64,000 nt of DNA from Geosiphon pyriformis uo1 (GCA_016748015.1 JAAOMT010000516.1:1-64000); one strand, 5' to 3'; shown: positions 17,447 to 64,000, counted from the stretch's first letter. Notes: generated from the letters alone by a model not told the origin. Translations and numbers: made by a program.

Positions 17447-19473
17447 TTACAGTTTTTCATTCATTTTGAATGTTTTTTTCTCATTTTTTGTTGTTTTTCT
17501 TCCATATAAATAACAAAGTGCAAAAGTGTATTGTGCCAGTATATGTTTTGTTTCTGCTGGTTTTAAATAAAATTCAAATGCTTTTTCTAAATTTTTCGTC
17601 ATTTCTTCTCTATTAGCATAACAATTTGTAAAATAATATTGTACATTTAAATCTCTTGCCTTTGCTGCTTTTAAAAAAAGTTCAAATGCTTTTTCTATAT
17701 TTTTTGTTATTTTTTCTCTATTAACATAAAAAGCTGTAAGATTGAATTGTGCCATTTTATGTTCTGCCTCTGCTGCTTTTGAAAAAAGTTCAAATGTTTT
17801 TTCTGAATTTTTTGTTGTTTCTTCTCCATTTAAATAACAAAGTGCAAGATTGTGTTGTACCAGTATATGTTCTGCTTCTGCTGCTTTTGAATAAAGTTTG
17901 AATGCTTTTTCTGAATTTTTTGTTGTTCTTTTTCTACTAGCATAACAAACTGCAAGATTGTATTGTGCTATTATATATCCTGCCTTTGCTGCTTTTGAAA
18001 AAAGTTCAAAGACTTTTGCTAAATTTTTTGTCATTTTTATTCCATTAAAATAACAAAAAGCAAGATTGAATTGTGTATTTAAATCTTCCACCTTTGCTGC
18101 TTTGGAATAAAGTTCAAATAATTTTTCTGAATTTTTAGTTGTTTTTTCTCCATTAACATAACAAGCTACAAGATTTAATTGTGGTTTTAAATCTCCCACT
18201 TTTGCTGCTTTGGAATAAAGTTTAAATGCTTTTTCTGAATTTTTTGTCATTTTTTTTCCATTTTGATAACAAGCTGTAAGATTAAATTGTGTATTTAAAT
18301 CTCTTATCTCCGCTGCTTTTAAATAAAAATCAAATGATTTTTCTAAAATTTTTCTTATTCTCTATTCATTTTGATAACAAAGTGCAAGATTGTATTGTGT
18401 TGTTGTGTTTTCCACCTCTGCTGCTTTTGAATAAAGTTAATTTGCTTTTCTGATTTTTTTTTCGTTTTTTCTCCATTATTATAACAAGCTGTAAGATTTA
18501 ATTATGCTTTTGTATGTCCTGCCTTTGCTGCTTTTAAAAACCATTCAAATGCTTTTTCTAAATTTTTTGTTGTTCCTTCTCCATTTAAATAACAATTTGC
18601 AAGATTGTATTGTGCTGTTATATGTTTTACCTTTGCTGTTTTTAAATAAAATTGAAATGCTTTTTTAGAATTATTTGTTGTTCCTTCTTCATTATCATAA
18701 AAAACTGCGAAATTGTATTATGCCAGTGTATGTCTCGCCTCTGTTGCTTTTGAATAAAGTTGAAATGCTTTTTCTGAATTTTTTATTGTTCCTTCTCTAT
18801 TAGCATAAAAAAGTGCAAAATTAAATTGTGCTGTTGTATGTCTCATCTTTGCTGCTTTTGAATAAAGTTGAAATGCTTTTTCAGAATTTTTTGTTGTCTC
18901 CCTTCTATATAAATAACAAAGTACAAGATTGAGTTGTGCCATTGTATGTCTCGCCTCTGCTGCTTTTGAATAAAATTTGAATGCTTTTTCTAAATTTTTT
19001 GTTGTTTCTTCTCCATTATCATAACAAATTGCAAAACTATATTTAGTATTTGAATCTCCTGTCTTTGCCACTTTTAAATAAAGTTCAAATGCTTTTTTTT
19101 GATCTTGTTTAGTGCCAATTCTATTATTATAACAATGTTCTAAAAAGAATTGTCCAAAAGAGTTGTCTGCATTCATTGCTTTTCGAAATTCTAAAAATGT
19201 TCTTTCTAAATTAAGAATAATTTTAATTCCATGTTCGAAAGAAAAGCTGAGCAAGATATAGTCTATCAAATGCTTTGAACTTTTATTATTTAAGCAAATG
19301 AAGAAGTTTTCAGGTTTTTTCTGATTGCACTCAACATATTATTTTACCAAGTCAGCAACTTTTAAATATTTACTAGCTGAAAAAATGGCCAAATTTTCTT
19401 TGATAACAATTAATGCTTCTTCAAGCCATTTGAAAGATGAAGTTGCATTTTCAATTGATGAAATTGAAGACAT
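17447..19473 (-). pseudogene. Sel1 (SLR) repeat protein pseudogene, ~15-16 repeats (paralog C)
   Basis: ATG at 19473. N-terminus (MSSISSIENATSSFKWLEEAL...ENLAIF) is homologous to those at 26370 and 47901. 36-aa repeats KAFxLYSKAAxAG..AQ.NLA.CY.NG in ORFs 18718-19269 and 17447-18250, broken by stops/frameshifts and many G>E/R and E>K changes. No recognisable kinase downstream. Confidence 0.88.
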
Positions 19474-23306: not shown

Positions 23307-26300
23307 TCAAGTGTGTCTTTATTCGTATGACTAATGCTAGTAGAACAATCCAGATCTGGAAAAAAGACGCTTAAATCAGAAAAATTCTTCACCATTAAAT
23401 ATGATAAATGAAAGTCTCACCACTCATTGAACATATAAAGTTCAAGATATGTTGACTTTTATATCTTGTTTCATCATGTTGAGCACCTTTTACCTCTTCA
23501 GAATTAAGTCTTTTCTCACGGACGAGTTTATTTAATGACAATTATCGCGGGCAGCAATGACTTTTTGTTGAAGTTCTTCTGCACTATCACGACAAGACGG
23601 ATCATATTGCCAATTTTTTTCAATTATTTCCTGAATACATTGAAGTGTATGTTTCTTGATTGTAGGACGCTTTCCCTTAATCACATCATGTACCACGTTG
23701 ATAGGATCTGTATTGTTAAAAGGTCTTTCTCCCGATATAATTTCACATGAAATGATAGCAAAGCTGTATATATCTCTATACTTAGTATGAGAACCCTCCT
23801 CGAAAATTTCTGGCACAAGATACTCAAGAACACCATAAATTTTTCCAGACTGTGGAGTGTCATCTGCAGGACGACAGAGTCCAAGATCAGAAATGACAAC
23901 TTTTAAGGGGTTTGTTATAAAAACAAGGATATTTCCAGGATGCAAGTCCCCATGCACCAGTTTTGATTTATGGATAAATCGTAGGCCACCAGCGATTTGA
24001 AAAAGAATACGAAGAAACATGTCCCAAATAAGAATATCTTTGTTCAACTTGAGAAAAGCTCTGAGGTCCCCGTGTTCCGCAAATGGTAAAACCATAACAT
24101 ATTCATCGGTTGTAATGTCTTTTGTGATCCCATAGCATTCAAGGATGTATTTGCAAGTGGCACTTTGATGATGCGAAATAAACTACACAAATATAGTTTT
24201 AGTGTTAGAAAAGGGTAATAAAAATCACATAGATTCTTAAAATGAAATACCTCATCTGGATTAATATATTTTATATTCTGGCTATCTTTGAGATACTTCA
24301 AAGCAACCTTTGTAACCCCAGTTCGTTCATACTTTTGACTTTTCTTTTCCCAAAATAGAATTTTGCCTATCTCCCAACTACCTTTTTTAACAATACCAAA
24401 TCCTCCCTCTCCCACCTTATCTAAAAATTCGATCTCGTTGGGAGAAATCCATTCTAGGCAGCCTCTGCAGTTTTCAGAANNNNNNNNNNNNNNNNNNNNC
24501 CTCTGCAGCTTTTGAATAAAGTTCAAATGCTTTTTCTGAATTTCTCATCGTCCCTTCTCCATTAGCATAACAAAGTGCAAGATTGTATTGTGCATTTAAA
24601 TGTCCCGCCTCTGCTGCTTTTGAAAAAAGTTCAAATGCTTTTTCTGAATCTTTTGTCGTCCCTTCTCCATTAGCATAACGAAATGCAAGATTGTATTGTG
24701 CATCTAAATCTCCCGCCTCTGCAGCTTTTGAATAAAGTTCAAATGCTTTTTCTGAATTTCTCATCGTCCCTTCTCCATTAGCATAACAAAGTGCAAGATT
24801 GTATTGTGCATTTAAATGTCCCGCCTCTGCTGCTTTTGAAAAAAGTTCAAATGCTTTTTCTGAATCTTTTGTCGTCCCTTCTCCATTAGCATAACGAAAT
24901 GCAAGATTGTATTGTGCATCTAAATCTCCCGCCTCTGCAGCTTTTGAATAAAGTTCAAATGCTTTTTCTGAATTTCTCATCGTCCCTTCTCCATTAGCAT
25001 AACAAACTGCAAGATCGTATTGTGCATTTAAATGTCCCGCCTCTGCAGCTTTTGAAAAAAGTTCAAATGCTTTTTCTGAATCTTTTGTCGTCCCTTCTCC
25101 ATTAGCATAACANNNNNNNNNNNNNNNNNNNNCCCGCTGCTTTTAAATAGAGTTCAAATGCTTTTTGGATGTTTTTTGTGGTTCCCCATCCATTTTGATA
25201 ACACCATCCTAGGTTATATTGTGCATTTTGATTTCCTGCCCCTGCTGTTTTTAAATAGAATTGAAATGTTTCTTCTAAATATTTCACTATTTCCCATCCC
25301 TTTCGATGATACGTTCCAATACTGGTTTGTGGACTCGGATTTCCCTCTTTTTCCAGATCTTCCGTTATTTCTAATCGAGTTCGATGATATACTCTAAGAG
25401 CGATTTGTCCAAGTAAATCTCCCGCCTCTGCAGCTTTTGAAAAAAGTTCAAATGCTTTTTCTGAATCTTTTGTCGTCCCTTCTCCATTTAAATAACAAAG
25501 TGCAAGATTATTTTGTGCATTTAAATGTCCCGCCTCTGCAGCTTTTGAAAAAAGGTCAAATGCTTTTTCTGAATCTTTTGTCGTCCCTTCTCCATTAGCA
25601 TAACAAAATGCAAGATTGTATTGTGCATCTAAATCTCCCGCCTCTGCAGCTTTTGAATAAAGTTCAAATGCTTTTTCTGAATTTCTCATCGTCCCTTCTC
25701 CATTAGCATAACAAACTGCAAGATTGTATTGTGCATTTAAATGTCCCGCCTCTGCAGCTTTTGAAAAAAGTTCAAATGCTTTTTCTGAATCTTTTGTCGT
25801 CCCTTCTCCATTAGCATAACAAAATGCAAGATTGTATTGTGCATCTAAATGTCCCGCCTCTGCTGCTTTTGAATAAAGTTCAAATGCTTTTTCTGAATTT
25901 CTCGTCGTCCCTTCTCCATTTAAATAACAAACTGCAAGATTGTATTGTGCAAATGCATTACCCGCCTCTGCAGCTTTTGAATAGAGTTCATATGCTTTTC
26001 CTTGATCTTGAGAAGTACCCGTTCCAGTATCATAACAACGTCCCAAGAAGAATTGTCCAAGAGAATCTTTTGCGTTCGCTGCTTTCTGATATTTTAAAAA
26101 TGCTTTCGTTAAATTAGGGATAGTTCCAATCCCATGTTCTAAAGAAAAGCCGAGTAAAATATTGTCTATCCAACGCTTTGGATTATTCAAGCAATCGAAT
26201 AAATTTTCAGGTGTTTTCTGATTGCGCACAAGATATTTTTTCACTAATTCAGCAACTTTTGAATATTCAGTAGCTGGGAAAATGGCCAAATTTTCTTTGG

Positions 26301-26370
26301 TAACAAGCAATGTTCCTTCAAGCCAGTCGAGGGTTGAAGTTGCGTTTGCAGTTGATGAATTTAAAGACAT
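23307..26370 (-). CDS. Sel1-repeat + TKL-type protein kinase (paralog A, most intact copy; interrupted by gaps)
   Basis: ATG at 26370, then Sel1 repeats. Kinase exon with GEGGFG and VALK (24251-24479), GT-AG intron 24183-24250, then an exon with HGDLHPGNIL, SDLGL, YLVPE and DIYSF. A 1-nt deletion relative to paralog B gives a stop at 23532-23534 just after the kinase domain. The ancestral tail continues through an intron (~23356-23420) to TGA at 23307-23309. Confidence 0.88.
24480..25132 (-). repeat. Gap-bounded contig of near-identical Sel1 units (216-bp dimer), probably misplaced by scaffolding
   Basis: N at 24480-24499 and 25113-25132. The insert is alternating HLN/DLD 108-nt units and sits where paralog B has its Cys-rich linker. 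Confidence 0.8.
25420..26010 (-). repeat. 108-nt Sel1 tandem array of paralog A
   Basis: Near-identical units ...gcttttgaa(t/a)aaagttcaaatgctttttctgaat...cgtcccttctccatt... with period 108. Confidence 0.95.
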
Positions 26371-26764
26371 GATTTTCAAACAAAACAAGAACAGTATTAA
26401 GCCTTGAATATTTTGTATGGGTAAAGAAAGAGTTTGTCTTGTTAATAAATAAGGATTTCAACCTCTAATCACATTCCTGAAAAGGCTAGGCCTTGAAGAA
26501 ATTAGAAACGTTGGAAAGTTCTGAAAACACACAACCTCTCAGCCAGATTGATTAAACGGGTAGAGATTGTCTAGGAACTCAAATGTCATTGTCTTATTGC
26601 TATTTTAATTTAAATGAGATTTTTTCGCGTAACAACCGAAATGCAGCTTCCAAAAAAAATTCTTAATATCAAGAAAAGGTATATCACTCTAATTTATAAA
26701 TGATAGGCTTTAATAATAAGTTTAGGCTCTCACTGGTGTAAATTTTATCTTGGATTTTTGGCGT

Positions 26765-26786
26765 GTCGATACACCAATTTAATTAA
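26765..26786. promoter_or_regulatory. Candidate conserved upstream element (paralog A)
   Basis: GTCGATACACCAATTTAATTAA, ~400 bp upstream of the ATG. Matches 20034-20055 and falls in the segment missing from paralog B. Confidence 0.4.
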
Positions 26787-39592: not shown

Positions 39593-40939
39593 ATGGAATA
39601 AATTTTTATATTGAAACTGTATTATTACCTTTGTTCTATCTTAACAATTTATTTATTCTTTTCACTTGATCTACATAAAATTTCTTTTACATATATTTTG
39701 AATTATTTTGAGAATGATTTTTCAAAAGCATCATTTAAAGAAAATCAGTCAACAATCAACAAATTCAGAAATCATATTTGGTCTGAGAAAAAGAAATCAA
39801 GGTCTCATTAATCAAATGGGTAAAATATACCTAGGTCCAGATACACCAAGATATATGGATTTACAACTTTCAGCTCTCTATGTTAGCACTGCTTATTGCT
39901 TTAAGGAATCGAAAGATAAAGTTGCTAATAGAGTTTATGGTAAAAAAAATTTTCTATAAATTCAAACATATCACTTTTTCTTTGACAAAAAAGCATTTAA
40001 TTGGGGGAAACATTAAAAAATATTATTTTTAATAAAAGCTGAACTAATTTTCAATGGTCACAACCAACAAATCATCATGATTTCTTTTAAGACGGATTTT
40101 CCTAAAACTTTTGAAGACTGGAGCAGCTAATTATTTAATTTCAATTTGAAGTTTGCTGACTCAAATGGTGTAAATTTTGATTCAGAGTTTTATAAAAGGT
40201 ATAAGTCTCTTGAACGAAGATTAATATCAAAAATTGAGCCAATTTTAGAAGAAGCCAAAACACTTTTATTTGATATTGTAGATAGTATTCAAATTGTAGT
40301 TCATGGAATGGGTGGAGGTTTGTAAATTAGATTTATTTTAGATATCGATATGATGTTTAGAAAAAAATATTGAATTTTTCTCGATATTCTAAACATTCAA
40401 AATATTTTTTTAAGTTTTCGCAATATTAGCTGAGTACCATATTGCTTTGCAACCAAATAATCTATTTAAAGTTATTGTACACACTTTTGGGCAACCTCAT
40501 ATTGGGAATACTCAATCTACATCATTTATTTGGATATTAATGAATGAAAGAAAAATGGACGTATTGAGAGTTACACATAGCAACAATTATCTACTAAGAA
40601 TTCCACAAAGCAGTTCGTTTCTACACCCTTCTTTTGAAATGTGGATTGAATCAGATTGCAATTGTCAGGCTAATAATGGAAATAACAGGATTTACGGTTG
40701 CTATGATCTTTTTAAAGAATTCCTTGACGTTTATATTGAAAGTAATGTAAGCACAAGGATTCAGTATTTTGTAAACTTCATATGAAAATAAAGAGTTTTG
40801 AAATTTATTAATGAAAACTGTTGCAATAATTATTTAGGAATGCCTTAATGGGCAACCTACCCAATCTAAAATTGCAAATTTAGGAGCATACTTTCAACAT
40901 ATTATGGGAAAATATCCACATCCAGATTTTGAAGAATAA
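39593..40939 (+). pseudogene. Secreted-type class-3 lipase-like (alpha/beta hydrolase) pseudogene 1
   Basis: Hydrophobic N-terminus; SALYVSTAYC; elbow IVVHGMGG (40293-40316) followed by a GT intron; VHTFGQPHIGN; RVTHSNNYLLRIP; HPSFEMWI; last exon ECLNGQ...ANLGAYFQHIMG ends at TAA 40937-40939. In-frame TAA at 40128-40130 and a frame break in exon 1. Confidence 0.8.
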
Positions 40940-41922: not shown

Positions 41923-43246
41923 CTAAAGAGTCATCCATGGAAAGTTCTCAGGTGGACATTGCATCATCATCCCAATGTAAGGTCCATTATGCACGGCATA
42001 ATTACTGGTCATGCATTGGTTGTTACATTCCTATAAAAAATAAAGATGAAGATGATAAAATAAATAACCTTTTAAATCTAAGGAGAAATTTTTAGAAATA
42101 TTTACCGAGCTCTCTTCAACAAAATGATCTGGCCCTGTTTGTGGTCCTGTACAAGCAAATACCTTTTGGGTAGCACACAAGCAATTATCTGCCTCAATCC
42201 AATTTTCTAAAAGTGTGTGAATGTAAAATGATTTGGAAACTCTTTCTGGTAGCCTTGGAATATAATCATCCATATTAGTAATCCTATGAATTATAATTTT
42301 ACTGACAAGTGAATTTACATATTGTGCAAATTGATAATTCCCAACACGAGATTGTCCATAAGTATAAATTTTTATTTTTTGTTTAATGTTGAGTGTTATT
42401 AATTCTAGCATTTCAAGCAAAACATATACTAAAATTTTAAAAGTATATCGATTTAGTATTTAAAATTAAATATGTTTTTATTTTAAAAAATTCTATAAAT
42501 CACTTACCACCACCTGAACAATGTCCAATTCCAATAACCTTTCTAATAACTTCATTTTTAAGTAGACTATCATGAAATCTTTTAAATTTCTGTTATATGC
42601 TCTCAAAACGTCTCTTAAACTCTTGATTAATTTTTACTCCATCAATCTGAGAATAAGGGACCAAAATATTTTGTCTAGTTCTTCAGTATTCCTCGTTTCC
42701 TAATGGTTCACCTTTTACCACAATAATTATTGTGTTATCAACAGCAAAAAATTTCACTACAACAATATCGAAATTGTTCTATTAGGGCAAAATTATTTTT
42801 AAAATTATATCTGGTAAATTTCAAATAAAAATACCATAAATTTCTGGCCCAATAGCATACATTTCATTAAGACAATAAGAACCACCAGCAAGAAGTGTAA
42901 ATTCTTCCAAATAACCATAAGGGATTTTAAGATTCCTTTTCAGTAAAAAATGCCCTTTGGCCTTAATTTTATTATTAAAATTTAAGAAATTTATTAGTAA
43001 TGAGATATTTTTTTCCGTAAAAAAACATTTGCTTTTTAAATTTGGCCCTAATAAAACTTTCATTTGTTGGACTATAGGATTTTTTTGGGAATCACTTCTT
43101 GCTGGAACGAGCCTTGAATGAGCTGATGCTAAAAGATTGCCAGAATTTGGGAGAATTTCCATATCCATAATATCATTACCTAGACAAATTCTAATACAAA
43201 AAGAAATATGATAAAGTAGAACTGAAATATACGACTTCCTAACCAT
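41923..43246 (-). pseudogene. Secreted-type class-3 lipase-like pseudogene 2
   Basis: Signal-peptide-like MVRKSYISVLLYHISFCIRICLG; LAGGSYC; elbow IGHCSGG (42509-42529) followed by GTAAG; YTYGQSRVGN; RITNMDDYIPRLP; last exon ECNNQC...VHNGPY. In-frame stops at 42683-42685 (TGA) and 42593-42595 (TAA). Confidence 0.82.
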
Positions 43247-44866: not shown

Positions 44867-47800
44867 AATATATTCGCTTTATTTGTACATCAAATTAACA
44901 ATGTAGAAATTTGTAATGAAATCACAATTCAAAATGCTATTATGTGTTTAAAAAAGGTTTACCAGAATGTTCCAAGTATTATTATAATAAATTTTTCAAT
45001 TCAAATGAACAGCATACTCTTAATATTTTCATTGTTTAAAAAGCTTAATAAAAGGATTTCAATTTTATATTTAGATGCTATTAAAAAGTGTGCATCTATT
45101 GCGCTCGAACTATGTGAGCCAAGAGCCTTAATCCCATATGAACCATAATTAAAACCAAATACTTTTATTTGTTGTCTTAACACTCAAATGGACATCATCC
45201 ACTACAGCACCATTGAATATCACCAGCCCATCCTTTTAATTAGCCCTGAGCGCAGTGTGAGGAAGCCATGCTCAATCACAATACATGATTAAAAATTTCT
45301 TACCAACTCAACAATTTGGAAGTGGTCAACATACAATCCTTGAAGATGAAACCTTTGAAAGCTTTGTCTTTATACTAGAGAATTTGAATCCTTAACTGCT
45401 TAAGAATGATCGACTCATCTCAAAATTATTTTTTGTTGCAATACTTTCTAAACATCTTGTTTTTTTAATTCTTTTTAATAATTTTTAATTTATTATTTGT
45501 GTTAAAGCTTATAAAGTTAGTAACAATATTGAATTAAAGTATTTATATTTGAATAGTTAATGATTAAATTTACAAATTTTTAAATTAATTAATTAATTTG
45601 TTGCAAAAAATAAAAATTTATTATATTATATCACTTTCGTATAAAAATGTAACTTTAAACTATACACACATAAAAACAAATATCTCTTTAAGTTAATATG
45701 CCTATAATATTTGGATAAATTCAGATCGCAAATATGATGATATAATAAATTCTACAATTTGTTATTTTAAAGAAGTAAAACTAATTAAATGGTTAATTAG
45801 GTTTATATATTAAAACTTTAAAGTATTTTATGTTTGATTGAAGTCAAAATTAAAGAAATATTTTCCAATTCAAGTTCGCACTTTGAATATATGATGAAAA
45901 AATGCCTTATTGATTAGAATTAAAGTTTGTTTTCAATTAATTTTATTAATTTTTGCTTAATAGAATCAAACATTTATTTGCTATTATTACAAAAGTCTTT
46001 TAAAATTATATCTTAAAATAATTATCAGCGTTAATTGTGATGATAATCTATATAAATTTAGTTTATAAAATTTCATTAATTTTGTGTTTTTGTAAACCTT
46101 AAATTAATATTCACACTAACTAACCAATTAGAATTTGTAAATTCCAAATCGAATTTTTAAATTGTTTATAAAAAGTAAAATTGCTTATTTGGTAAATTAA
46201 ACTCATATATTCATAGATAGTTTAGTTTTAAATTTATAAATTTTTGGAATAAATCCTAATGTCTAAAATAATTATGTTCAAAAATAAATTCTAATTTTCA
46301 GATTAATTTGAATGAATTTAATAATTTATTCTTAGATATGTTAAGTGTCAATTTAAATTAAGTCAATTAAATCTTATTTTATTTATTATTAATATCAATA
46401 TTTTAATTTATTTTAAATATATATTTTTATAATTAAAAAACAATCTAAGTTTTGTTTAAATCTCTGATAGCAATAATTCAAAAAATTATATTGTAAAAAA
46501 CAATTTTTTTTTGAATATTTTTGCAATAAATTTTAAAAAAATAAAATAAATAATAACAATAAAATTTAATAAAATGTGTAAGTTCATTAAATAAATAAAA
46601 TTAACTTTAAAAATATTAATATTTAATTATTATGTACTAATTATGCTAATACAAATATTTAACAATAAACAATAATAATTTTTTTAATTGAAACAATAAG
46701 AATAATAATACATTTATCAAAAATTAAAATTAAATTTTTAATAAATTATTACAAATTATAGAAGCAAAACAAGCTATATTTTAATACGTATTTTTTTTAT
46801 TAATAAACAGTATTATGTATTTCAAAAAACTGATTGATATTATAAAAATTAAAACAACATCTTTTTTTCTCATATCATTGCACTTTTTAATAATAATATA
46901 ATAATTAAAAAAGTTATTATCAATTGTTGAAATTTTTTTAGAGAAATAATTTTTATTTTGGTGCTTAATAATTAATGGTTTTTTGAAAATTAGGTAATAT
47001 AAAACTTTTAATTTAATTTTGTTGGTCTTAAATTGGTTATTAAAAATAATATTATGTAAAGTTTAAAATTTTTTAAATGTTGTTATTAAAATTAAGCTTG
47101 CCAATTTACTTTTTTATTATATTTAAAATTTCCAAATTTGTGGTTATTGTTGAATTTTGTAATTTTTTTTGGGATATTTTTTAATAACATCAAAAAATGT
47201 TCTCAAAATATTTTATTAAAATTATTGCTGTTATATTAAACTAGTTGATTTGTATTAATATTTTATGGTTTATTTGAAAAATTTGTTAAATAAAACATTG
47301 ACCCGATAATTAATTTTAGATGCAAAAATAGCATTAAAGTTTTTAATTATTTGACTTTAAATTCTAAACTGTTTTTTTTGGCTTTAACAAAACTTTAATG
47401 TTTTAAGTTATTGTTTAATTTGGTTGGTTGGTTTATTGTTATGTGCTCAAATTACCTGGAAAAACTCATATTTAAAATTTGATTTTAAAATAAATTTTCC
47501 AAAATACAAGATAAAATTTATACCAGTGAAAGCCAAGGAAATTACTTTAAACTTGTTATTAAAGCCTATCATTGATAAAGTAGAGTGATATACCTTTTCT
47601 TGATATTAAGAATTTTTTTTGGAAGCTGCATTTCGGTTGTTACGTGAAAAAATCTCATTTAAACTAAAATAGCAATAAGACAATAACATTTGAGTTCCTA
47701 AACAATCTTTACCTGTTTAATCAATCTGGCTCAGAGGTTGTGTGTTTTCAGACTTTCCAACGTTTCTAATTTCTTTAAGGCCTAGCCTTTTCAAGAATGT

Positions 47801-47900
47801 GATTAGAGGTTGAAATTCTTATTTATTAACAAGACAAACTCTTTCTTTACCCATACAAAATATTCAAGGCTTAATACTGTTCTTGTTTTGTTTGAAAATC

Positions 47901-50900
47901 ATGTCTTTAAATTCATCAACTGAAAATGCAACTTCAACCCTCAACTGGCTTGAAGGAACATTGCTTGTTATCAAAGAAAATTTGGCCATTTTTCCAGCTA
48001 CTGAATATTCAAAAGTTGCTGAATTAGTGAAAAAATATCTTGTGCACAATCAAAAAACACCTGAAAATTTGTTTGATTGCTTAAATAAGCAATATTCAAT
48101 ATTTTACTTGGCTTTTCTTTAGAACATGAGATTGGAACTACTCTTAATTTAACAAAAGCATTTTTAAAATATCAGAAAGCAGCGAATGCAAAAGATTCTC
48201 TTGGACAATTCTTCTTAGAATGTTGTTATGATACTGGAATGGGTACTTCTCAAGATCAAAGAAAAGCATATGAACTCTATTCAAAAGCTGCAGAGGCGGG
48301 TAATACATTTGCACAATACAATCTTGCAGTTTGTTATTTAAATGGAGAAGGGACGATGAGAAATTCAGAAAAAGCATTTGAACTTTATTCAAAAGCAGCA
48401 AAGGCGGGACATGTAACTGTACAAAATAATCTTGCAGTTTGTTATGCTAATAGAAAAAAAACGACAAGAAATTCAGAAAAAGCATTTGAACTTTTTTCAA
48501 AAGCAGCAGAGGCGGGACATTTAAATGCACAAAATGATCTTGCATATTGTTATTATAATGGAGAAGGAATGACAAAAAATTCAGAAAAAGCATTTGAACT
48601 TTTTTCAAAAGCAGCAGAAGCAGAACATTTAGATGCAAAATACAATCTTGCAGTTTGTTATGCTAATAGAAAAAGAACGACGAGAAATTCAGAAAAAGCA
48701 TTTGAACTTTATTCAAAAGCAGCAGAGGCGGGACATTTATATGCAAAATACAATCTTGCAGTTTGTTATGCTAATGGAGAAAGAACGACGAGAAATTCAG
48801 AAAAAGTATTTGAACTTTATTCAAAAGCTGCAAAGGCAGGACATTTATATGCAAAATACAATCTTGCAGTTTGTTATGCTAATGGAAAAGGAACGATGAA
48901 AAATTCAGAAAAAGCATTTGAACTTTATTCAAAAGCTGCAGAGGCGGGACATTTATATGCAAAATACAATCTTGCAGTTTGTTATACTAATGGAAAAAAA
49001 ATGACAAGAAATTCAGAAAAAGCATTTGAACTTTATTCAAAAGCACCAGAGGTGGGACATTTAAATGCACAAAATAATCTTGCAAGTTGTTATTTAAATG
49101 GAATAGGAACGACAAAAGATTCTGAAAAAGCGTTTGAACTTTATTTAAAAGCAGCAGAGGCGGGATATTTAAAAGCACAATACAATCTTGCAAGTTGTTA
49201 TTTAAATAGAAAAGGAACGACAAGAATTCAGAAAAAGCATTTGAACTTTATTCAAAAGCTGCAGAGGCGGGACATTTAGGTGCACAAAACAGTCTTGCAA
49301 GTTGTTATTTAAATGGAATAGGAATAACAAAAGATTCAGAAAAAGCATTTGAACTTTATTCAAAAGCTGCAGAGGCGGGACATCTAAATGCACAAAATAA
49401 TCTTGCAGTTTGTTATGCTCATGGAGAAGGAACGACGAGAAATTCAGAAAAAACATTTGAACTTTATTCAAAAGCAGCAGAGATGGGAAATTTATTTGGA
49501 CAAATCGCTCTTAGAGCATATCATCGATATCAATTAGAAATAACGGAAGATCAGGAAAAAGTGGGAAATCCGAGTTCACAAACCAGTATTGGAATGTACC
49601 ATCGAAAGGGATGGGAAATAGTGAAATATTTAGAAGAAACATTTCAATTCTATTTAAAAACAGCAGAGGCAGGAAATCAAAATGCACAATATAACCTAGA
49701 ATGGTGTTATCAAAATGGATAGGAAACCACAAAAAACCTCCACAAAGCATTTGAACTCTATTTAAAAGCAGCGGAAGCAAATAACTTGTGTTATCAAAAT
49801 GATTTTCCTGATTTGAATGTCCATGACCTTTCTTTAGAGGACCAAGACAATCTGGAATATATTATTTTACGATTCCAAAATCGAGGCTTTAAATACAGTG
49901 ATAATTTCCAAGGAGAATTTTTAAATTTTGAAGCCTTCTTTGACCAGCTTTCAGATGAATTCAAGTGTTTTAAATGTGGCAACTTGGGTATAATCATTAA
50001 TGGATCTCCTATATGTCCATTTTGTGATACTAATAAAAGGGAGGATGTCTTTAAAGCTAGATTGCCGAAATGTCTAGAATGTTATAGAACATTAAAAGAT
50101 CTACTTTGGTGTGTATTTTGTGAAACATCACGATTTTCACAGATTCGGAACACATGGAAAAGTGGAAATGATAATATTGATCAGTATATACTATACACAC
50201 AGCGAAATTCTGAAAACTGCAGAGGCTGTTTGGAATGGATTTCTCCTGATGAGATTATATATTTAGATCAGGTAGGAGTGGGAGAATTTGGTACTGTGAA
50301 AGAAGGTAGATGGAAGAGAGGCAGAATTCTATTTTGGGACAATAAAATCCAAAAGTATGAACGAACTGGTGTTACAAAGATTGCTTTGAAATATCTTAAA
50401 AATAGCCAAAATATAGAACATATCAATTCAGATGAGGTATTTCCTTTTAAGAAATCTATGTGATTTTTATTATCCCTCTTTCTTTTCTAACACTAAAACT
50501 ATATTTGTGTAGTTTATTTCGCATTATCAAAGTGCCACTTGCAAATACATCCTTGAATGCTATGGGATCACAAAAGACATTACAACCGATAATTATGTTA
50601 TGGTTTTACCATTTGCGGAACACGGGGATCTCAGAGCTTTTCTCAAGTTGAACGAAGATATTCTTATTTGGGACATGTTTTTTTGTATTCTTTTTCAAAT
50701 CGCTGGTGAACTATGATTTATCTATGAATCAAAACTGGTGCATGGGGACTTGCATTCTGGAAATATCCTTGTTTTGAAAACAAACCCCTTAAAAGTTGTC
50801 ATTTCTGATCTTGGACTCTGTCGTCCTGCAGATGACACTCCACAGTCTGGAAAAATTTATGGTGTTCTTGAGTATCTTGTGCCAGAAATTTTTGAGGAGA

Positions 50901-51388
50901 GTTCTCATACTAAGTATAGAGATATATACAGCTTTGCTATCATTTCATGTGAAATTATATCGAGAGAAAGACCTTTTAATAATACAGATCCTATCAACAT
51001 GGTACATGATGTGATTAAGGGAAAGCGTCCTACAATCAAGAAACATACACCTCAATGTATTCAGGAAATAATTGGAAAAAATTGGCAATATGATCCGTCT
51101 TGTCGTGATAGTGCAGAAAAACTTCAACAAAAAGTCATTGCTGCTCGCGATAATTGTCATTTAAATGAACTTGTCCATGAGAAAAGACTTAATTCTGAAG
51201 AGGTAAAAGGTGCTCAACATGATGAAACAAGATATAAAAGTCAACATATCTTGAACTTTACATGTTCAATGAGTGGTAAGACTTTCATTTATTCATATTT
51301 AATGGTGAAGAATTTTTTGATTAAGCGTTTTTTTTCCAGATCTGAATTCTTCTATTAGCATTAGTTATACGAATAAAAACACACTTGA
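47901..51388 (+). pseudogene. Sel1-repeat + Cys-rich linker + TKL-type kinase pseudogene (paralog B)
   Basis: ATG at 47901. Frameshifting deletion at ~48089-48096. 11 core Sel1 units; -1 frameshift at ~49225; TGG>TAG at 49720-49722. Linker CFKC/CPFC/CLEC/WCVFC then WKSGNDNID..LEWI. Kinase exons split by intron 50437-50512; CGA>TGA at 50714-50716; HGDLHSGNIL and SDLGL present. Confidence 0.92.
48254..49490 (+). repeat. 108-nt Sel1 tandem array of paralog B (11 core units)
   Basis: Repeated aattcagaaaaagcatttgaacttt(a/t)ttcaaaagc(a/t)gcagaggcgggacattta with period 108. Confidence 0.95.
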
Positions 51389-52799
51389 ACAAATCAGTAA
51401 GCACTTTCAAATTATTTTAATAATATTATTAATTGTTTTTTATCAATATCTAACTATGAAATGGTTTGAAACAGATGAATTATTTGAACAAAGAATTGTT
51501 TTTTTAAAAAAATATTATATATGATTTGATTAGTTAAGGGAATTTAAAATATATTTATTTAATTCATCTACTCCATTTTTAAATATCAGACTATTATTAA
51601 TTTTGAACCGTTTTCTTGTCATAACAAATCGATATATCTCGTTAAAATTTTTTATTTAAATATCCATAAAAAAAATTATTTATTTGAAATAAAAACTTAT
51701 TTAATTTAGTATTTTTAAACCATTACTTTGCAATGGCAGAAAAGCTTCACCCATCAAAAAATATTTAAATTTATAAAAATCATTACAATTGGAATAAAAA
51801 TACTCATTTGAAAAATTTAAAAAAATAATTGTCAAATTATTTTTAAACTTAGAATTTTAATATTTAGAGATAATTTTAAAATTATCTCTAATAAATCTGA
51901 AATTTACTATTTTTTGTAAATTTTATAATTTAATTAAAAACTTTCTCAGTTCACCAAACACTTTTGTATTTGATTTCTGCTAGTTTCTATAATTATTAAA
52001 TTAGATCTCTGGTCTGTTGTTTAAATGTAAAGTTTTTCAAGAAAAAGTTCCATAAACTCAAAAGTGTAAAAGGGCAATAGTATATAATAATAAAATTATT
52101 GATAGCTAATTAAACATCAGCCAAATACGGTGAAAAATATCTAGTTTTTCTTTATCCAAATTTAACACTCTAGAACTTTCCAGGCTGTTCATCCTCATTA
52201 ATATCTTAAACAGTCGATACAAACGGCCTGGTAAAAATTTTAAGTTAATTTAATATCAAAAGTTTTATTAAAGACCAAAGAATCGCATATTAAATCTTAT
52301 ATTAAAAAAATCTGTTGCTATAATCTTTCTAACAATATGTCTTGGTGGAATTATGATCAATTTTTAAAGGTAATTTTTTGTCAAACTATATATTGGTGAG
52401 ATAATTTTGCAAGCAATTAATTATTATTCTGAAGAATAAAATTAAAAAAAATTTGAAAGACAGATTGTGAACTAATGAATCCGAAATTTTTTTTCAAACA
52501 TAGGCTTCAAACTAATAAAAAAAATAACATAGATTTATAAGTTTAAAATTTATTATTTATTTTATATTTGAGCCAATAATACCAAATAGAAAAACCATAT
52601 TAGCAAAATTTCTCATATATTTAATGATTTTATATTTTATACAAAATTTGATATTATATTCCTTATCTTAAATTCACATAAAAATCTAACATTTAAATGA
52701 ATGAAGAATTATAATAAATCTATTCAAATTTTATTTATTTATATACTTGTTCAAATGAGTGTATCTTTTTACTGCTAATGGGCATAAATGTGAATTGCA

Positions 52800-55700
52800 T
52801 ACTTTTCTATACGTGCTTAAATATCCTGACTTATCAAGACGACATTACATAAAATTTATTCAGTGATAGTATCCTATAATTTTCTACATGAGCAAATATT
52901 TTAAATCTGACTCCAAGCTTATCCAAAACATTCCAATGCTTTATTCTGCAAGGGTTTCGTGCTTCCGTCAGAACCGAATTCAACTCCTCCAATAGACTGC
53001 TAATATCCAGTTCAGCCCAATTTCTTGCCAAGGGTTTCCGAAGTTTGTTGCCAGTGACGAGTAAGAAAAGTCTTTGTTTCATGGTTCACTCCCTTCATCC
53101 ATGTTTTTGAATCTCTTAAAATGACAAAACCACACCAATTTCCCCTTAAACTACTGTCATTGGTTCCATGCTGTATTTAAAATTTTCTTTCTTAGATTCC
53201 AGTTGGCTATATATGTGAACACATAGCCAGAGCTTTCGCTATCACCACACATTGCACATAGTGTGTTTGGATAATTAGCCTTGTAAATATTTTTTTTAGT
53301 TGCAGGAAGCCGCCTGTGAATTGCTTTTATCAAGTATGTGCACATGCCCATTGTGGTCTTGCTTGTGATACCTGTGCTCACCTGACAATTCATGCGCCAT
53401 AAAGCCAATATCTTGACCCAGTCTATGTTTTCCATGTTGTCCATTTCCTCAAATTCAAAGGTATGCATATTGTTAACTCTTTTTTTTTTAAACTTTCTAT
53501 TTAGCAAAGCTTTTTTTTTAACTTAATGTTAAATAATTTTAAAACTTATATGTTACTCATTAGATAAATTTTCTATTAATTTATAGCATGCTGCCTGTAT
53601 GAAGAGAATTTCTTGTATAACAATTCTATTAGAAATTTTCAAAAAAATCAATAAAAAAAGTATATTTTTTAAAAAAACTGTTTTCAAAATTAAGAATTTA
53701 AATAAAGTACCTTATTTTAATTTAATCATGGTGTATGATAAAATAAATCAACATTTGGAATCATATAATCACATAAAGACTCTTTGCAAAACTTTTATAA
53801 GAAAAATTTTTCTTAGCTTTTTTGTTTTATTAAATGATGCTAATTTTTTCCAAAATAAGGCTGTAAGTTTTTCTAAATAACAATAAATAGTTTAGACACA
53901 AATTCTATTTTGGATACAACATCTGAATAATTTTTTTAAACTGACTATTATGTAATCAAATTTTTTTTCAAGCACCAAAGCAAATATAGTATCCAAAATT
54001 ATTTCTTTTTCAACATTTTAAGATTTTTGGATTTGTTCTCTTTTCAGAATCTCAATTAAAATAATATTTATTGCTTTAAACTTTAACATTTCTAAAACCA
54101 CATAAAACATATAATTAATGGGTTTTAAAATTGGTGTACAAAATTCTTCCTAAGCAGAAAATGCAGTTATTGTAATATAAACACATTTAGTTTTTTAATA
54201 ACTGTCTTTTTCACAAATCTATTTTTAAATAATCAATTTTGCTTTCAACTACTTTTTCAAAGTCAAATTTGATAAATAAATTTCTTTAATTGTAAGAGTT
54301 TTTTATCAAATATTTATTGAAAAATATTTAATTATTAAAATAAGTTAATTTTAGGGGGTTTTCAAAAGAAGGAAGACTTATAGATGAAATTAACAATATA
54401 TTTAGTAAAAAACTTTGTAAACTTAAATTATGTTTTTTTTTTAGAATTTTTAGAGTGTTAAAAATAATCTTAAAATTTAAAGTCTACCAAATTTAGACAA
54501 GAAAAGCAATTAAAAGTTTTGTAAATAAAATGAATTATTAATATTTTTATTTTAAGTTTAAACTTAAAAAATTTAAAAATGCTAAGATAAAAAATTTTCT
54601 GAAGCAATTTTCTGTTTAATCACATGTTTTTGGCTTGACTTTTTTTCCAAAATATTATTTGTTTATGAACTTTCGCAATATTCTATGTTTTTTTTCAAAC
54701 TATAAACTATAATGAAGGTATAATATTCTTAAAACCAAGAAGATGCTTTTTGAATTGATTTATTTGTTTACAAGTATTACATTCCCAAAAAATTTAAATA
54801 AAATCAAATAGTGCAATAATATTTGCAAGTTTCTGATTTCACTCTTATAGGATGTTGATCATAAAAACTTGTGCTAAGAGAATCTGATAAAAAAATTCTG
54901 AATTGTCATCTTAATTCCAGATTCAGCTTTAAAATTTTTAAATTCATTATATGGTAAATATATTCTAACATCTTAAACTGTTTGTTTAACAGATAATTCT
55001 ATAATTAAAACACACTTTTAATAATTAAAACTACAACTGTAATCTTAATTAGACTATTTTTAAAATCAAAACACATAATAGTACATCTAGTTTAAAAATA
55101 GTTAATAATATCACAATTAATTATACAAATTTTTTTACCAATTAAATTAATAAAATTCTAAAGATTATGAGCAGTTGTGCCCATTAAAAGAATATACAAT
55201 AAAGTTTTATGTGTATTTTGGCATTTTATAAATGCTTATTAACATTAGTTTTGACTATGTAAACTGTATTTTTTTCAATAAGTAATTATTAAATTTTATG
55301 ATTGTTTTTTGTCACAGTATTACTAATTATAGTTTGATTGACTTAATTATTTCAAAATCAGTTAAAGCAGTTTATACAGTCTTTATTAATGTTCTTATAA
55401 AATTTTTTTTTACTATTATAGCTGAATTTATGCAATTATTTACCAGTTTTTTAAGATTAATATTTACCATAAAACTGTGATTATTTGTCAAACTGACAGC
55501 TGCTATTATTGTTATTTTAGAAGTAAAAAACATTTAGATTATTCTACCAAATTTTAAAAAAGTAAAAGTCTTTTTCTTAAAACTATTAACATTAAAAAAA
55601 ATTCTTAACAATTTTCAATTATTGCAGAGAAATTAATATCTAAAGCAAAAGATTTATAAACCAAAATTAAATGAAAATTTTAAAAAAAAGATGAAAAAAG

Positions 55701-59900: not shown

Positions 59901-62900
59901 TAACATCTAACAACAAAAATAAAAATATTTAAAAACTTACCAATATTAGAATCCTAAAAATCATTTAAAAATCAAGATTTTATTCAATTGTAAAAAATTT
60001 AATAAAAAATCTATTTATATCACTTTTAATCAGCTTATAACACATTTTCAGTTCCAAAAAAATCTTAAAAAATTATTAATATTCAAAAAAAACAATTTAA
60101 GACCAATAAACACTCTTAACAAATAATATTAGTTCTTAGTAACAATGTTATTTTTTTTATTTATAAAACTCAAATTACATAGATTTAATTTTAAATAGTG
60201 GTTTATTAGTTAGTATTATAGCCCAGCATTTTTAGATATAATTAAAAAAAAATTTAATAAATTATTAATTTGATTTATAATTAATATTCATAAAAAAAAA
60301 GAAAAATTTAGAAATTGTTAAAGCTATTCTTATTTGAATTAATAAAATTTGTATAAAAATTGATATAAAAGTATCAAAAGCAAAAAATTATATTATAATT
60401 GTTGAAAATAAATAGTAGAAGAAGGCAAAAGCTTTTTTTAACTATAAACTTTATAAATTTATACTTTGAAGCAAATTTTAATCATTTGTAGTTAAATATT
60501 ATTATTGAACTGTTTTTTCTTCTGTAATTCAACAATAACAAAATAGTAATAATAATAATTCTAATATGTTAGAAAAATTTTTTTTTCATAAGTTTGTATT
60601 TGCATTAACATTAATATAGTCAATACATCAGAATAAATAAAATTTAATGTTTTAATACATAAATTTTAATAATATATATATAAAAATAAAGTATTATTTA
60701 TTTTATATTAAATAAATTTTCAATTACATATAATATTAATATTAATTTATTTAAATAAATAATATTAATTTTTACTGTAAAAAAATATGCATAATTTATA
60801 TATAAACAAAAAAAAACTATTTTTATTAAGCAAAAAGTCTAAAAATTAACATATATTTTTTTTTAAACATTTATATTGTATTAATTTTAACTTTAACCAG
60901 TTTTATTACTTTTGCCAAAAAATTCTTGATAATATATTTACTCTCATTTTATTTTATTAATAATATTATAGTATCTTAAAGCTATATATATATATTTATA
61001 AATAAAAATTAAGTTATCAAATATATTATTTATAATTTAATTAAGTAGTTATAGATATTAAAGTATTATATTTGTTTCTAATATTTTTTTTAATTTGCTT
61101 ATAAAGTTTTGTTTATTATTAAAAACTCTATATTAAGATTTTTTAATAACTAGTTAAATTAATATATGTTTAAAAAAATTGTATAAAAATTATTTTTGTT
61201 ATATAGATTATTATTTTAGTTTGTTAATAAGATATTGAATTTTTTGTTTGCTTTATTTTTATGCTTAAAATTAATAAGAACATATTTAATATTTGATAAA
61301 TAAATATTATAATTAATATAATCACATTGATAAAATTTTTTTAGTTTAGTAAGCAAACTGCATATTGTTATTTATATTGTTTGCTTATTTTTTGGTGTTT
61401 AATATTACATGGTTTTTTAATTATATATTTTTTTGACTAATTTGCTTTAAGATTTAAATAAATCTATAATTATTTTTAATAGTTTATATATAAGCTTTAA
61501 TATATTGACATGATTATCTTTTTTTTTAAAGTTATAGAGTTTATTAATTAAAACAATTTTTTTAATATATTTTTTAAAAAAAGTAATAGTAGAATTTTTA
61601 AATTGTAGTAACTTATCAAAATAAATTATTTTAATAAAATAAGTGTTTTTAATGATTATGATTTTAAAATATAAATAATATTAATAATTATCTTAAAAAC
61701 TGTAAATTAAGTATTAACATTATTTAGATAAAGTTCTGTAAAAAATTAAAACCAATATTTTATTGCAATTATTAATTACAAAAAAGCAAATAAGATTTTT
61801 TGCTATAATATAACAAATTAAAAATTTAATATTATTAAAATATAATAACAATTTTGATAAACTTTGTTTTAGAAAAAACAAGCTTAATTATAAATATTAA
61901 TTTACTTTTTCTATCTATTTTATCAAAATAAAAATAGTTATAAAGTCGTTAAAACTGGTTATTGTTAAAATAAAATAATATTGTCAATTATAAATAAATT
62001 AAGAACAGATAATATTAAAATTAAAATTATATTTTTGTAAAATTTAAATAATTAATTATAAAAAGCTTTGTATAAAAAAATGTATTAATAAGATTTAATA
62101 ACTGGCCAACATAAGTTTGGCAGAATATTAAATAGTTAAATAAAATTTTTATACATAAATTTAATATTATTAAGCTTTATTGTTCAAATTGTTAAAAACT
62201 GAGAAGTTATTAACATTAAAATATAAATTTGTATTAAAAATTACAATATTATTGCATAATTTTTTTGAAAAAAATTCAATTTCTGTAAGTAAAACAATAT
62301 TTAAGAACATTAAAATTACAAAAATACAATACATATAAGTCTGAATAATTATTCAAAATCATAAATTTTGTCTTTAATATTCAAGTCACAAGTTATAAAA
62401 TTGTTATCTATCTTAATTATTTTATTAAAACATTTGTAGTTTTTGTATCTGTATTTTTCACTTATTTTAATTCTTTTTTTTTTACTTGTTTATTTTTTGT
62501 TTTTTATCTATATTCTTTTTTTTTTACGAATTTTTTTTTAATTTTCTTAATCTATTTTTTTTTTTTATAAACTTTTTTAACTTTTTACCATATTTATTAT
62601 ACTTAATTTTAACTTTTTTCAATACTTGTTTAATATTTTTAACATTTTTTATGGTGTTTTGTGTATTGGAAAAATATGACTTAATATATGTTTGGTTTGT
62701 ATCAAATCTGTATAATTTTATGTTCTATATTCTATAATTGTTATTATATTATACAATATTTATTCATGTATTTATTAAAATATATTTTTTTGTCATTATT
62801 GTTTTATATATTTTAACATTAAAAATAGATTGCGTTTTATTATAAAATATTGTAAAATAATTTTAAATCTTAAAAATAATATATATTTTAATATTGGTCT

Positions 62901-63179
62901 TAAAATAAATATTAAATATTTAAATATTTAAATATTTAAATGTCAATTTTGAAAATTTTAAATTTAAATTAAGTATATACTATTTGAAATTTGGCCAACT
63001 TCTAAACTTATAAGATTGAATTATAGAAATTATAAAGAAAATAAAACAGAATAATCTCTTTAAAATCTCAAAATAAAATATTAAATATTTGGACAGAATT
63101 TAGACCGAGTAATTTTTAAAAAAATCAAAATTTTTTTGGTTTCTGTAACTTTTTTATAAATATTAATAGCCTTTAAAAT

Positions 63180-64000
63180 ATTATATTGTATATTAATTTT
63201 TTTTTATAACAAAAAAAAGTTGGTATTTTATATCTAATTTTTTATTTTTGTTGTTTTTAAATAAAGTTAAAATGGTTTTTGTTTATTTTTTGTTGTTTTT
63301 TTTCTATTAATATAACAAAATGCAAAATTATATTGTATTTTTGTATTATTTATCTTTGCTGTTTTAAATAAAGTTCAAGTGTTTTTATTGAATTTTTTAT
63401 TGTTTTCTTTTTATTTTAATAGTACTATCCATAATTATATTGTGTAATGTTTTAATAAATATTTTGCTTTTTATTGTAATAGCACTATTCAAGATTGTAT
63501 TATGTATTTAAATCTTCTGTTGCTATAACTTTTAAATAAAATTCCAATGATTTTTCACATTTTTTGTTGTTTCTAATTTATTAAAATTGCAATTTACAAA
63601 ATTGATTTGTGTATTTAGAATTCTTCTTTTGGTGCTTTTAGATAACATCATTTAAAAGAGTATTATGCTTTTTTATGTTTTATTTCTGCTGCTTTTAAAA
63701 AGAGTTTAAATGCTTTCTTATTATTTTTTATTGTTTCTTATCTATTATTATAACAAATTGCAAGATTGTACTGTGTATTTTAATTATTCATTTCTGCTGT
63801 TATTAAAATAAGTTCAGATGCTTTAACTTTAACTTAAAAAGTGCCAATTTTATTGAAGTAATAATGATTCAGAAAAAATGTTTAAGAGAATTCTTTATAT
63901 TTGTTGTTTTCTGATATTCTAAAAATACTTTTATTATTCAATTTTTGTTTAATTCTATATATTAAAGAAAAGCCAAGTAAAATATAGTGAATAGAGCTTT
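63180..64000 (-). pseudogene. Highly decayed Sel1-repeat gene (paralog D), continues beyond the window
   Basis: IHYILLGFSL at ~63963-63992 matches IDNILLGFSL / IDYILLSFSF of the other paralogs. Eroded units such as aaagcatttaaactctttttaaaagcagcagaaat and cagtacaatcttgcaatttgttataat occur on the minus strand. Confidence 0.75.

What the first reader, a model, noticed from the sequence alone, without database searches (positions are those of the whole stretch)
48254..49490. Sel1-repeat kinases with four hypervariable codons on one helix face: candidate variable-receptor (non-self sensing) system
Seen: the 108-nt units are close to nucleotide-identical, synonymous sites included, but vary at positions 3, 6, 10 and 13 of H-L-x-A-Q-x-N-L-A-x-C-Y-x-N-G. 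In paralog B, pos3 = F,T,N,D,Y,Y,Y,N,K,G,N; pos6 = Y/N; pos10 = V,Y,S; pos13 = L,A,Y,T. In paralog A, pos3 = F,D,N and pos10 = V,F,L. Paralog C adds M,T,K,I,L / L,F,H / A,N. Many changes are transversions or multi-nucleotide (tta/gct/tat; gtt/tat/agt/ctt), so the background C>T decay does not explain them. The spacing i, i+3, i+7, i+10 defines one alpha-helical face. Established: TPR/SLR solenoids bind ligands through the helix-A concave face, and fungal NLR-type allorecognition proteins (e.g. HET-E WD40 and TPR/ANK NLRs) show high internal repeat identity with a few positively selected positions. Inference: these genes could be NLR-analogous sensors in which a shuffling Sel1 'code' is wired directly to a kinase, with no NACHT/NB-ARC domain.
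Basis: partly seen in the sequence, partly recalled or inferred. Interest (0 to 1): 0.85.

Follow-up and report, generated by a model that had tools for sequence, protein, structure and literature searches.

The report
Variable-groove Sel1 repeat kinase family
This is a broken copy of a large family of signalling genes in the cyanobacterium-housing fungus Geosiphon pyriformis; in the intact copies, near-identical protein repeats change fast at just the residues that line a binding groove and are joined to a kinase, as in fungal self/non-self receptors, but what they bind is unknown.

Summary
The window is Geosiphon pyriformis (Glomeromycotina). The flagged gene B (cap, Sel1 array, four-CxxC linker, TKL kinase) is a pseudogene with two frameshifts and two stops. 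At least six paralogues are intact, and one shows both introns spliced in a probable RNA run. In nine stop-free arrays, the four codons vary 2.3-2.4 times more than four-fold silent sites (transversions 4.1 times; 9/9 arrays), while the scaffold is purified (0.38 times). A codon model gives omega near 3. None of 600 neutral simulations with gene conversion reached this excess. A decayed duplicate shows the codons are not mutation hotspots. They map to TPR positions 2/5/9/12, the known ligand-contact face. Units recombine, and sister genes with 96-99% identical caps share almost no unit code. One Rhizophagus clarus kinase-Sel1 gene shows the same pattern. This is the evolutionary regime of high-internal-conservation fungal NLRs, on a protein with no NACHT/NB-ARC domain; three such profiles found nothing in this genome. 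Ligand, non-self role and between-isolate polymorphism are untested, and these positions vary in all Sel1/TPR proteins. This scan has noted the family before on other contigs.

The parts
47901..48259 (+). Gene B start and N-terminal cap (about 120 aa, two degenerate Sel1 repeats); broken by a net 10-nt deletion at about 48089-48096
   Evidence: Pfam Sel1 on the same region of paralog A
48260..49446 (+).
   Evidence: SLR solenoid model pLDDT 86, TM 0.90 to 6OK3
49447..49790 (+). Divergent closing repeats and spacer; premature TAG at 49720-49722 (TGG in paralogues)
49840..50202 (+). Linker with four CxxC motifs (probable zinc-binding; fold not resolved)
   Evidence: model pLDDT 39, unusable; 141 matches genome-wide
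50206..50436 (+). TKL kinase N-lobe, end of exon 1; glycine loop decayed in B (GVGEFG against GxGGFG)
50437..50512 (+). GT-AG intron inside the kinase, conserved in paralogues; the equivalent intron of L048 is seen spliced
50513..51275 (+). TKL kinase C-lobe exon; premature TGA at 50714-50716; catalytic loop HGDLHSGN (HGDLHPGN in intact members); 3' end inferred from a probable second intron
23532..26370 (-). Paralog A: same architecture; open up to two 20-N gaps (25113-25132, 24480-24499) that hide the linker; 1-nt frameshift just after the kinase domain. A and B are an inverted segmental duplication
17447..19473 (-). Paralog C: cap plus 15 units, no kinase, several stops; a collinear C>T/G>A-decayed copy of the intact Sel1-only gene L047 (G000:C656)
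62900..64000 (-). Paralog D: heavily decayed fourth copy running off the window end (start approximate)

Best explanation
Gene B is a recently dead member of a birth-and-death family of cytoplasmic receptor-like kinases of Geosiphon pyriformis: cap, 5-26 Sel1 repeats, four-CxxC linker, TKL kinase. SHOWN: the repeat scaffold is purified and partly homogenised within each gene; units recombine and are gained or lost; residues 17/20/24/27 (plus 30 and 36) accumulate amino-acid changes faster than silent sites; these residues lie on one face of helix A. FROM ESTABLISHED KNOWLEDGE: helix A forms the concave groove of SLR solenoids, and TPR positions 2/5/9/12 contact ligands. INFERRED: each paralogue presents a different groove, selection favours new binding specificities, and binding switches the fused kinase through the linker or by oligomerisation. 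The most likely ligands are fast-changing foreign or non-self proteins met in the shared cytoplasm (other fungal individuals after hyphal fusion, mycoviruses, endobacteria, or proteins of the Nostoc partner). That would make these functional analogues of HIC NLRs, with the kinase standing in for the NOD switch and effector.
For: pN/pS 2.35, 1.63, 2.77 and 3.07 at the four sites over 352 units in 31 arrays. Omega about 3 with p<1e-7 at each site; scaffold mostly 0.02-0.35. Tree-free diversity ratio 2.4 (CI 2.0-2.9), transversions 4.1, 9/9 stop-free arrays; 0 of 600 neutral conversion simulations reach it. The codons are not hotspots in neutral decay (3.75 against 5.2 changes per codon; 86% C>T/G>A). 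Four-gamete incompatibility rises from 0.25 to 0.54 with distance inside the unit. Sister genes with 96-99% identical caps have 0.43-0.75 identity at the four codons against 0.93-0.97 elsewhere. 195 different four-site combinations. Helix-wheel arc of 80 degrees; TPR register; helix 1 is the concave face. Six intact genes with kinase motifs; spliced junctions. No TM or signal segment. Same pattern in one R. clarus gene. No NACHT/NB-ARC/NPHP3_N match in the genome. One member carries a MACPF-like C-terminal domain, a lead only.
Against: No ligand, phenotype or induction data. The same positions are the most variable in unrelated bacterial and low-identity Sel1 proteins, so their location is a property of the fold. 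The neutral simulations themselves give ratios of 1.2-1.4 (up to 2.0) and were not matched to the observed diversity, so the corrected excess is about 1.6-1.9. The excess is almost all transversions (transitions 1.2). Arrays share ancestry and are not independent. Tree-based omega is inflated by recombination. The assembly has gaps inside several arrays. No second isolate could be compared.
Confidence: 0.6

Rival explanations
1. Diversified adaptors for the fungus's own signalling network: after duplication each paralogue is selected to bind a different endogenous protein (substrate docking or scaffolding for the kinase). Selection is real, but it reflects paralogue specialisation and retention of unit-specific residues against homogenisation, not non-self sensing.
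For: Explains omega above 1 and the groove location equally well. TPR/SLR domains commonly bind self proteins. The AMF kinase and Sel1 expansions are usually read as signalling (PMC6123716).
Against: Unit codes are scrambled between genes whose caps are 96-99% identical, many copies are dead, and whole blocks of units are lost between duplicates. That is faster turnover than a stable self partner should allow.
Confidence: 0.22
2. Relaxed constraint only: exposed groove residues are neutral, the scaffold is constrained, and unequal crossing-over in a repeat-rich, methylated genome produces the pattern in a family that is largely selfish or dispensable.
For: The same sites vary in all Sel1 proteins. 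The family has many pseudogenes, and Sel1/kinase genes are highly methylated in R. irregularis (PMC8647823). My statistic has an upward bias under neutrality.
Against: The sites exceed silent-site diversity in 9/9 arrays and beyond all 600 neutral runs. Codon 24 keeps T at its third base in 145 of 146 units while the first two bases vary. The R. clarus array has zero four-fold diversity but 0.50 at these sites.
Confidence: 0.13
3. Targeted mutagenesis (local hotspots, or a diversity-generating-retroelement-like process) writes changes into these codons.
For: Many multi-nucleotide and transversion changes at the four codons; an NNT-like pattern at codon 24.
Against: No excess of change at these codons in dead duplicates. 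No adenine bias: A 0.30, C 0.34, T 0.22, G 0.22. No invariant template repeat or reverse transcriptase was seen among the window's ORFs.
Confidence: 0.03
4. Assembly artefact: chimeric joining of similar short reads creates mosaic units and varying unit numbers.
For: Gaps inside A, L031, L034 and others; 107-nt units could be errors.
Against: DNA contigs lay on the L048 array with no indel and one listed base difference inside it. Mis-joining cannot create new codons. The R. clarus gene shows the same pattern in a 1.7-Mb contig of an independent assembly.
Confidence: 0.02

Closest known systems
Fungal NLRs with high internal conservation (Podospora HNWD/HET-E WD40; TPR locus Pa_2_10340; ANK locus Pa_3_8560; PMC4986451, PMC13449251)
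   Same: Near-identical repeats, repeat gain/loss and recombination, a few positively selected sites on the concave binding face, frequent pseudogenisation.
   Different: Sel1-type 36-aa repeat; no NACHT/NB-ARC; repeats N-terminal and the output is a TKL kinase; Glomeromycotina rather than Dikarya; no allorecognition phenotype or allele polymorphism shown.
Expanded Sel1 and TKL (PF07714) gene families of arbuscular mycorrhizal fungi (PMC8647823, PMC6123716, PMC9453076)
   Same: Same domains, high copy number, birth-and-death; HGD-type catalytic loop. G9A89_002819 is 100% identical to locus L048.
   Different: The Rhizophagus examples seen here are kinase then Sel1; this family is Sel1, CxxC linker, kinase, an order my search found only in G. 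pyriformis. In the passages I read, those papers give counts and methylation, not repeat homogenisation or site-specific selection.
TPR ligand-binding hypervariable positions (Magliery and Regan 2005, PMC1261162)
   Same: Positions 17/20/24/27 equal TPR 2/5/9/12; N21 equals the semi-conserved backbone-binding Asn at TPR 6.
   Different: That is variation across a whole family; here it is within one gene on a homogenised nucleotide background. TPR 13 (position 28) is conserved in Geosiphon but variable in Rhizophagus.
Helicobacter pylori SLR (Hcp) family under positive selection (PMC1941758)
   Same: Sel1-like repeats with omega above 1 at surface sites.
   Different: Secreted bacterial proteins with disulfide-bridged, non-homogenised repeats and no kinase.

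Membership tests
Sel1-like repeat proteins (PF08238) | Tandem 36-aa helix-loop-helix repeats above the Pfam cut-off | tested here: met
   287 bits against cut-off 30.7
Sel1-like repeat proteins (PF08238) | SLR solenoid fold | tested here: met
   pLDDT 86; 13-residue helices with 7- and 3-residue loops as in c5321; TM 0.90 to 6OK3, 0.89 to 4BWR
AMF TKL kinases (PF07714) | PK_Tyr_Ser-Thr domain with glycine loop, VALK lysine, HxD..N loop and DLG motif | tested here: met
   Intact in L035, L040, L043, L046, L048, L050; broken in gene B
AMF TKL kinases (PF07714) | Kinase activity | not testable with these tools
   needs an in vitro assay
Fungal NLR (STAND receptor) | Central NACHT or NB-ARC NTPase domain | tested here: not met
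   none in the protein; no match to PF05729, PF00931 or PF24883 in the genome by a six-frame search that can miss intron-rich genes
Fungal NLR (STAND receptor) | N-terminal effector, NOD, C-terminal repeats | tested here: not met
   order is cap, repeats, linker, kinase
HIC diversifying repeat sensors (evolutionary regime) | High internal conservation (about 85% identity over 100 aa) | tested here: met
   13 of 29 arrays have three consecutive units at 85% aa identity or more; B reaches 0.84. My measure is not the published T-REKS score
HIC diversifying repeat sensors (evolutionary regime) | A few positively selected sites per repeat | tested here: met
HIC diversifying repeat sensors (evolutionary regime) | Selected sites on the concave binding surface | tested here: met
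   by helix geometry, TPR register and published SLR structure; not measured on coordinates
HIC diversifying repeat sensors (evolutionary regime) | Recombination among units | tested here: met
   distance-dependent four-gamete incompatibility; p<0.05 in 7 of 12 arrays; unit loss between duplicates
HIC diversifying repeat sensors (evolutionary regime) | Repeat number and order polymorphism between individuals | tested here: inconclusive
   only short Logan contigs from at most two samples; none spans an array
HIC diversifying repeat sensors (evolutionary regime) | Non-self recognition or cell-death phenotype | not testable with these tools
   no functional data
Diversity-generating retroelement | Adenine-directed change, template repeat and reverse transcriptase | tested here: not met
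   no adenine bias; none seen among the window's ORFs

The most novel reading that the evidence does not exclude
Glomeromycotina, in which NOD-type NLRs may be scarce (none detected in G. pyriformis here), use Sel1-array TKL kinases as their variable non-self receptor repertoire. The arrays diversify by unit shuffling and selection at groove residues, differ between isolates and nuclei, and decide anastomosis compatibility or the handling of cytoplasmic microbes, including Nostoc. Some members are wired to MACPF-like effectors.
Probability: 0.3. Interest if true: 0.82.

Novelty: new variant of a known kind. Interest (0 to 1): 0.55.

Why it matters
Sel1 and TKL kinase domains are among the largest unexplained gene expansions of arbuscular mycorrhizal fungi, and I know of no molecular basis for vegetative incompatibility or innate immunity in the group (own knowledge). 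If these arrays evolve like the sensor domains of fungal NLRs, the expansion gets a testable purpose, and there are named loci and codons to genotype across strains with known anastomosis behaviour. Long-read Rhizophagus genomes make the population test possible now. It would also show that this diversifying regime does not need a NOD switch.

Tried and rejected
C>T/G>A decay as the source of variation: rejected; decay is 86% such transitions and spares the four codons, and every codon B uses at these sites also occurs in other paralogues. Mutation hotspot or DGR: rejected. Folding the CxxC linker failed (pLDDT 39); Pfam gave only sub-threshold zinc-ribbon hints and the atlas only unnamed Mucoromycota clusters. 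A suspected link between the first 50 residues and the start of kinase-first genes was not supported by BLAST. Paper searches for Glomeromycota+NLR+Sel1 and Sel1+concerted evolution+Rhizophagus found no description of this pattern, but the library lacks most subscription papers and I did not read the Geosiphon genome paper.

Full report
SOURCE. The window is contig C589 of a 128.3-Mb, 792-contig assembly. The best protein hits are Geosiphon pyriformis G9A89 models, and a paralogue I fetched (L048) is 100% identical to G9A89_002819. The published G. pyriformis assembly is 129 Mb in 795 scaffolds (PMC9453076). G. pyriformis is a glomeromycotinan fungus that houses Nostoc (own knowledge).

OBSERVATION. 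The flagged stretch is an array of 11.4 units of 108 nt encoding Sel1 repeats (287 bits). In B, identity is 0.89 outside these codons and 0.56 inside. Transversions make up 28 of 42 changes inside against 20 of 64 outside (p=6e-4). 'Close to identical' is generous: B units average 85% nt identity, A 92%, C 76%.

ANATOMY. Gene B runs from ATG 47901 through a cap of degenerate repeats, 11 similar units, divergent closing repeats, a linker with four CxxC motifs, and a TKL kinase split by an intron at 50437-50512. It is dead: a net 10-nt deletion near 48090, a 1-nt deletion near 49225, TAG at 49720 and TGA at 50714, plus decayed glycine and catalytic loops. These lesions were not checked against reads. 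A (minus strand, 26370-23532) is B's partner in an inverted duplication and is split by assembly gaps. C is a kinase-less dead copy and D a remnant. The linker has 141 matches in the genome, many with stops. Among 20 loci fetched in full, six (L035, L040, L043, L046, L048, L050) have one open frame from cap to kinase N-lobe, a conserved intron and a stop-free kinase exon with HGDLHPGN and DLG; their arrays hold 5 to 26 units. No clear transmembrane or signal segment is present, so the proteins are probably cytoplasmic. On L048, run X2 shows both GT-AG introns skipped and no cover upstream of the start codon, while the DNA run X1 shows neither joint. X2 is labelled 'DNA?', so transcription is probable, not proven.

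SELECTION. (i) Over 352 units in 31 arrays, within-array pN over pooled pS is 2.35, 1.63, 2.77 and 3.07 at the four sites, 2.05 at position 30, 1.73 at 36, and below 0.8 at most scaffold sites. (ii) A codon model on unit trees of 10 arrays gives omega about 3 at 17, 20, 24 and 27 (p<1e-7 each) and 2-3 at 30 and 36, with about 17 sites significantly purified. Recombination can inflate this. (iii) A tree-free test in nine stop-free arrays gives diversity 0.40 at first and second positions of the four codons, 0.166 at four-fold silent sites and 0.063 in the scaffold: ratio 2.4 (CI 2.0-2.9), transversions 4.1, transitions 1.2, 9 of 9 arrays. (iv) Simulated arrays with neutral groove sites, gene conversion and three mutation spectra give 1.2-1.4 on average (maximum 2.0; transversions maximum 2.5); none of 600 reaches the observed values. 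The model is rough and ran at higher diversity than observed, so the fair excess is about 1.6-1.9-fold. (v) Natural control: C and L026 are dead collinear copies of L047. Their 182 differences are 86% C>T/G>A and are no denser at the four codons (3.75) than elsewhere (5.2), which excludes decay and hotspots. There is no adenine bias.

SHUFFLING. Four-gamete incompatibility between sites rises from 0.25 to 0.54 with distance inside the unit, and a permutation test is significant in 7 of 12 arrays. Silent distance among units is mostly lower within a gene (0.14-0.21) than between genes (0.19-0.33), so homogenisation is partial. Duplicates differ by blocks of units: L026 lacks seven internal units of L047. 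Genes whose caps are 96-99% identical share almost no four-site combination between best-matching units, with 0.43-0.75 identity at those codons against 0.93-0.97 elsewhere. There are 195 combinations among 352 units. Whether alleles of one locus differ between isolates could not be tested.

STRUCTURE. The model of B units 1-9 is a regular SLR solenoid (pLDDT 86; TM 0.90 to 6OK3). Helix A spans positions 16-28; on a helical wheel 17, 20, 24 and 27 fall in an 80-degree arc opposite the conserved A18, L22, C25 and Y26. In the c5321 structure the first helices form the concave face, which binds an extended peptide in the crystal (PMC3851747). With L22-A23-x-x-Y26 as TPR L7-G8-x-x-Y11, consistent with the Pfam TPR_6 register, the four sites are TPR 2, 5, 9 and 12, which Magliery and Regan found hypervariable and in contact with ligand (PMC1261162). 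I could not measure exposure on coordinates. The linker did not fold.

GENERALITY. The same positions are the most variable in bacterial and other Sel1 proteins, so where the variation falls is ordinary. What stands out is the excess over silent sites on a homogenised scaffold. One R. clarus kinase-Sel1 gene shows it sharply: ten units, four-fold diversity 0.0, groove diversity 0.50. The Sel1-linker-kinase order was found only in G. pyriformis.

MECHANISM. Most likely (0.6) these are variable-ligand cytoplasmic receptor kinases: unequal exchange renews the array, selection keeps new groove residues, binding switches the kinase, and failed copies decay like B. The evolutionary steps are shown. 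Ligand binding is inferred from the fold. Kinase switching and a non-self role are inferred by analogy only. Rivals are specialisation on the fungus's own proteins (0.22), relaxed constraint (0.13), targeted mutagenesis (0.03) and misassembly (0.02).

COMPARISON. It works like the high-internal-conservation sensors of Podospora NLRs, whose TPR and ANK repeats show repeat-number change and selected sites on the concave face (PMC4986451; PMC13449251). It is not an NLR: there is no STAND domain, and three STAND profiles found nothing in the genome (the search may miss intron-rich genes). Repeats fused directly to an enzyme without a NOD are known from fungal gasdermin proteases (PMC12881547). The AMF Sel1 and kinase expansions are well known, but my searches of the open library found no report of this selection pattern in them. 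This scan noted the same family on other contigs of this genome; those notes are not independent support. One of them led me to G9A89_019148, whose tail scores as MACPF-like in the atlas without a Pfam hit.

VERDICT. The feature is real and measurable, and it extends a known diversifying regime to a new repeat type, output domain and fungal lineage: a new variant of a known kind. The flagged gene is a pseudogene and the function is inferred. Interest 0.55; 0.82 if these prove to be the non-self receptors of Glomeromycotina (probability about 0.3). Spliced models were not joined; exons were searched apart by reference.

Noticed in passing
window 23128-28864 and 46024-51566: Paralogs A and B with about 1.5 kb of upstream AT-rich flank form an inverted segmental duplication of about 5.5 kb; A has an extra 620 nt at 26758-27379.
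   Followed up: partly
window 17447-19473 against L047 (G000:C656): C is a collinear dead copy of an intact Sel1-only gene; 86% of changes are C>T/G>A, many outside CpG, with G>A (88) exceeding C>T (49) on the coding strand. A usable neutral mutation spectrum for this genome.
   Followed up: partly
P0134 (G9A89_019148), residues 860-1315: A family member with a C-terminal domain that scores 0.97 to MACPF_1/DUF7431 clusters in the protein atlas but has no Pfam hit; possible sensor-kinase-pore-former fusion.
   Followed up: partly
G000 whole genome: No match to NACHT, NB-ARC or NPHP3_N profiles; NLRs may be scarce in this fungus, but the search can miss intron-rich genes.
   Followed up: partly
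L051:3001-6094 (Rhizophagus clarus, GCA_015698045.1): Kinase-Sel1 gene whose 10 units show no four-fold silent variation yet 0.50 diversity at the four groove codons. A second gene, from R. irregularis (L052), shows a weaker version: 0.18 against 0.36.
   Followed up: partly
window about 39700-40800 (+) and 42031-43246 (-): Two fragmented class-3 lipase-like genes facing each other.
   Followed up: no
window 1376-2116 (+), 13114-13416 (-), 53157-53507 (-): ORFs without a convincing Pfam match; they look like transposon remnants by eye (not tested).
   Followed up: no
L037:1855-2028: A Sel1 unit lies in inverted orientation between the array and the linker, a small inversion inside a paralogue.
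   Followed up: no
L048:3338-3405 and 4161-4240: Both introns appear spliced in run X2, which is listed as 'DNA?' but has no cover upstream of the start codon; it is probably RNA.
   Followed up: yes
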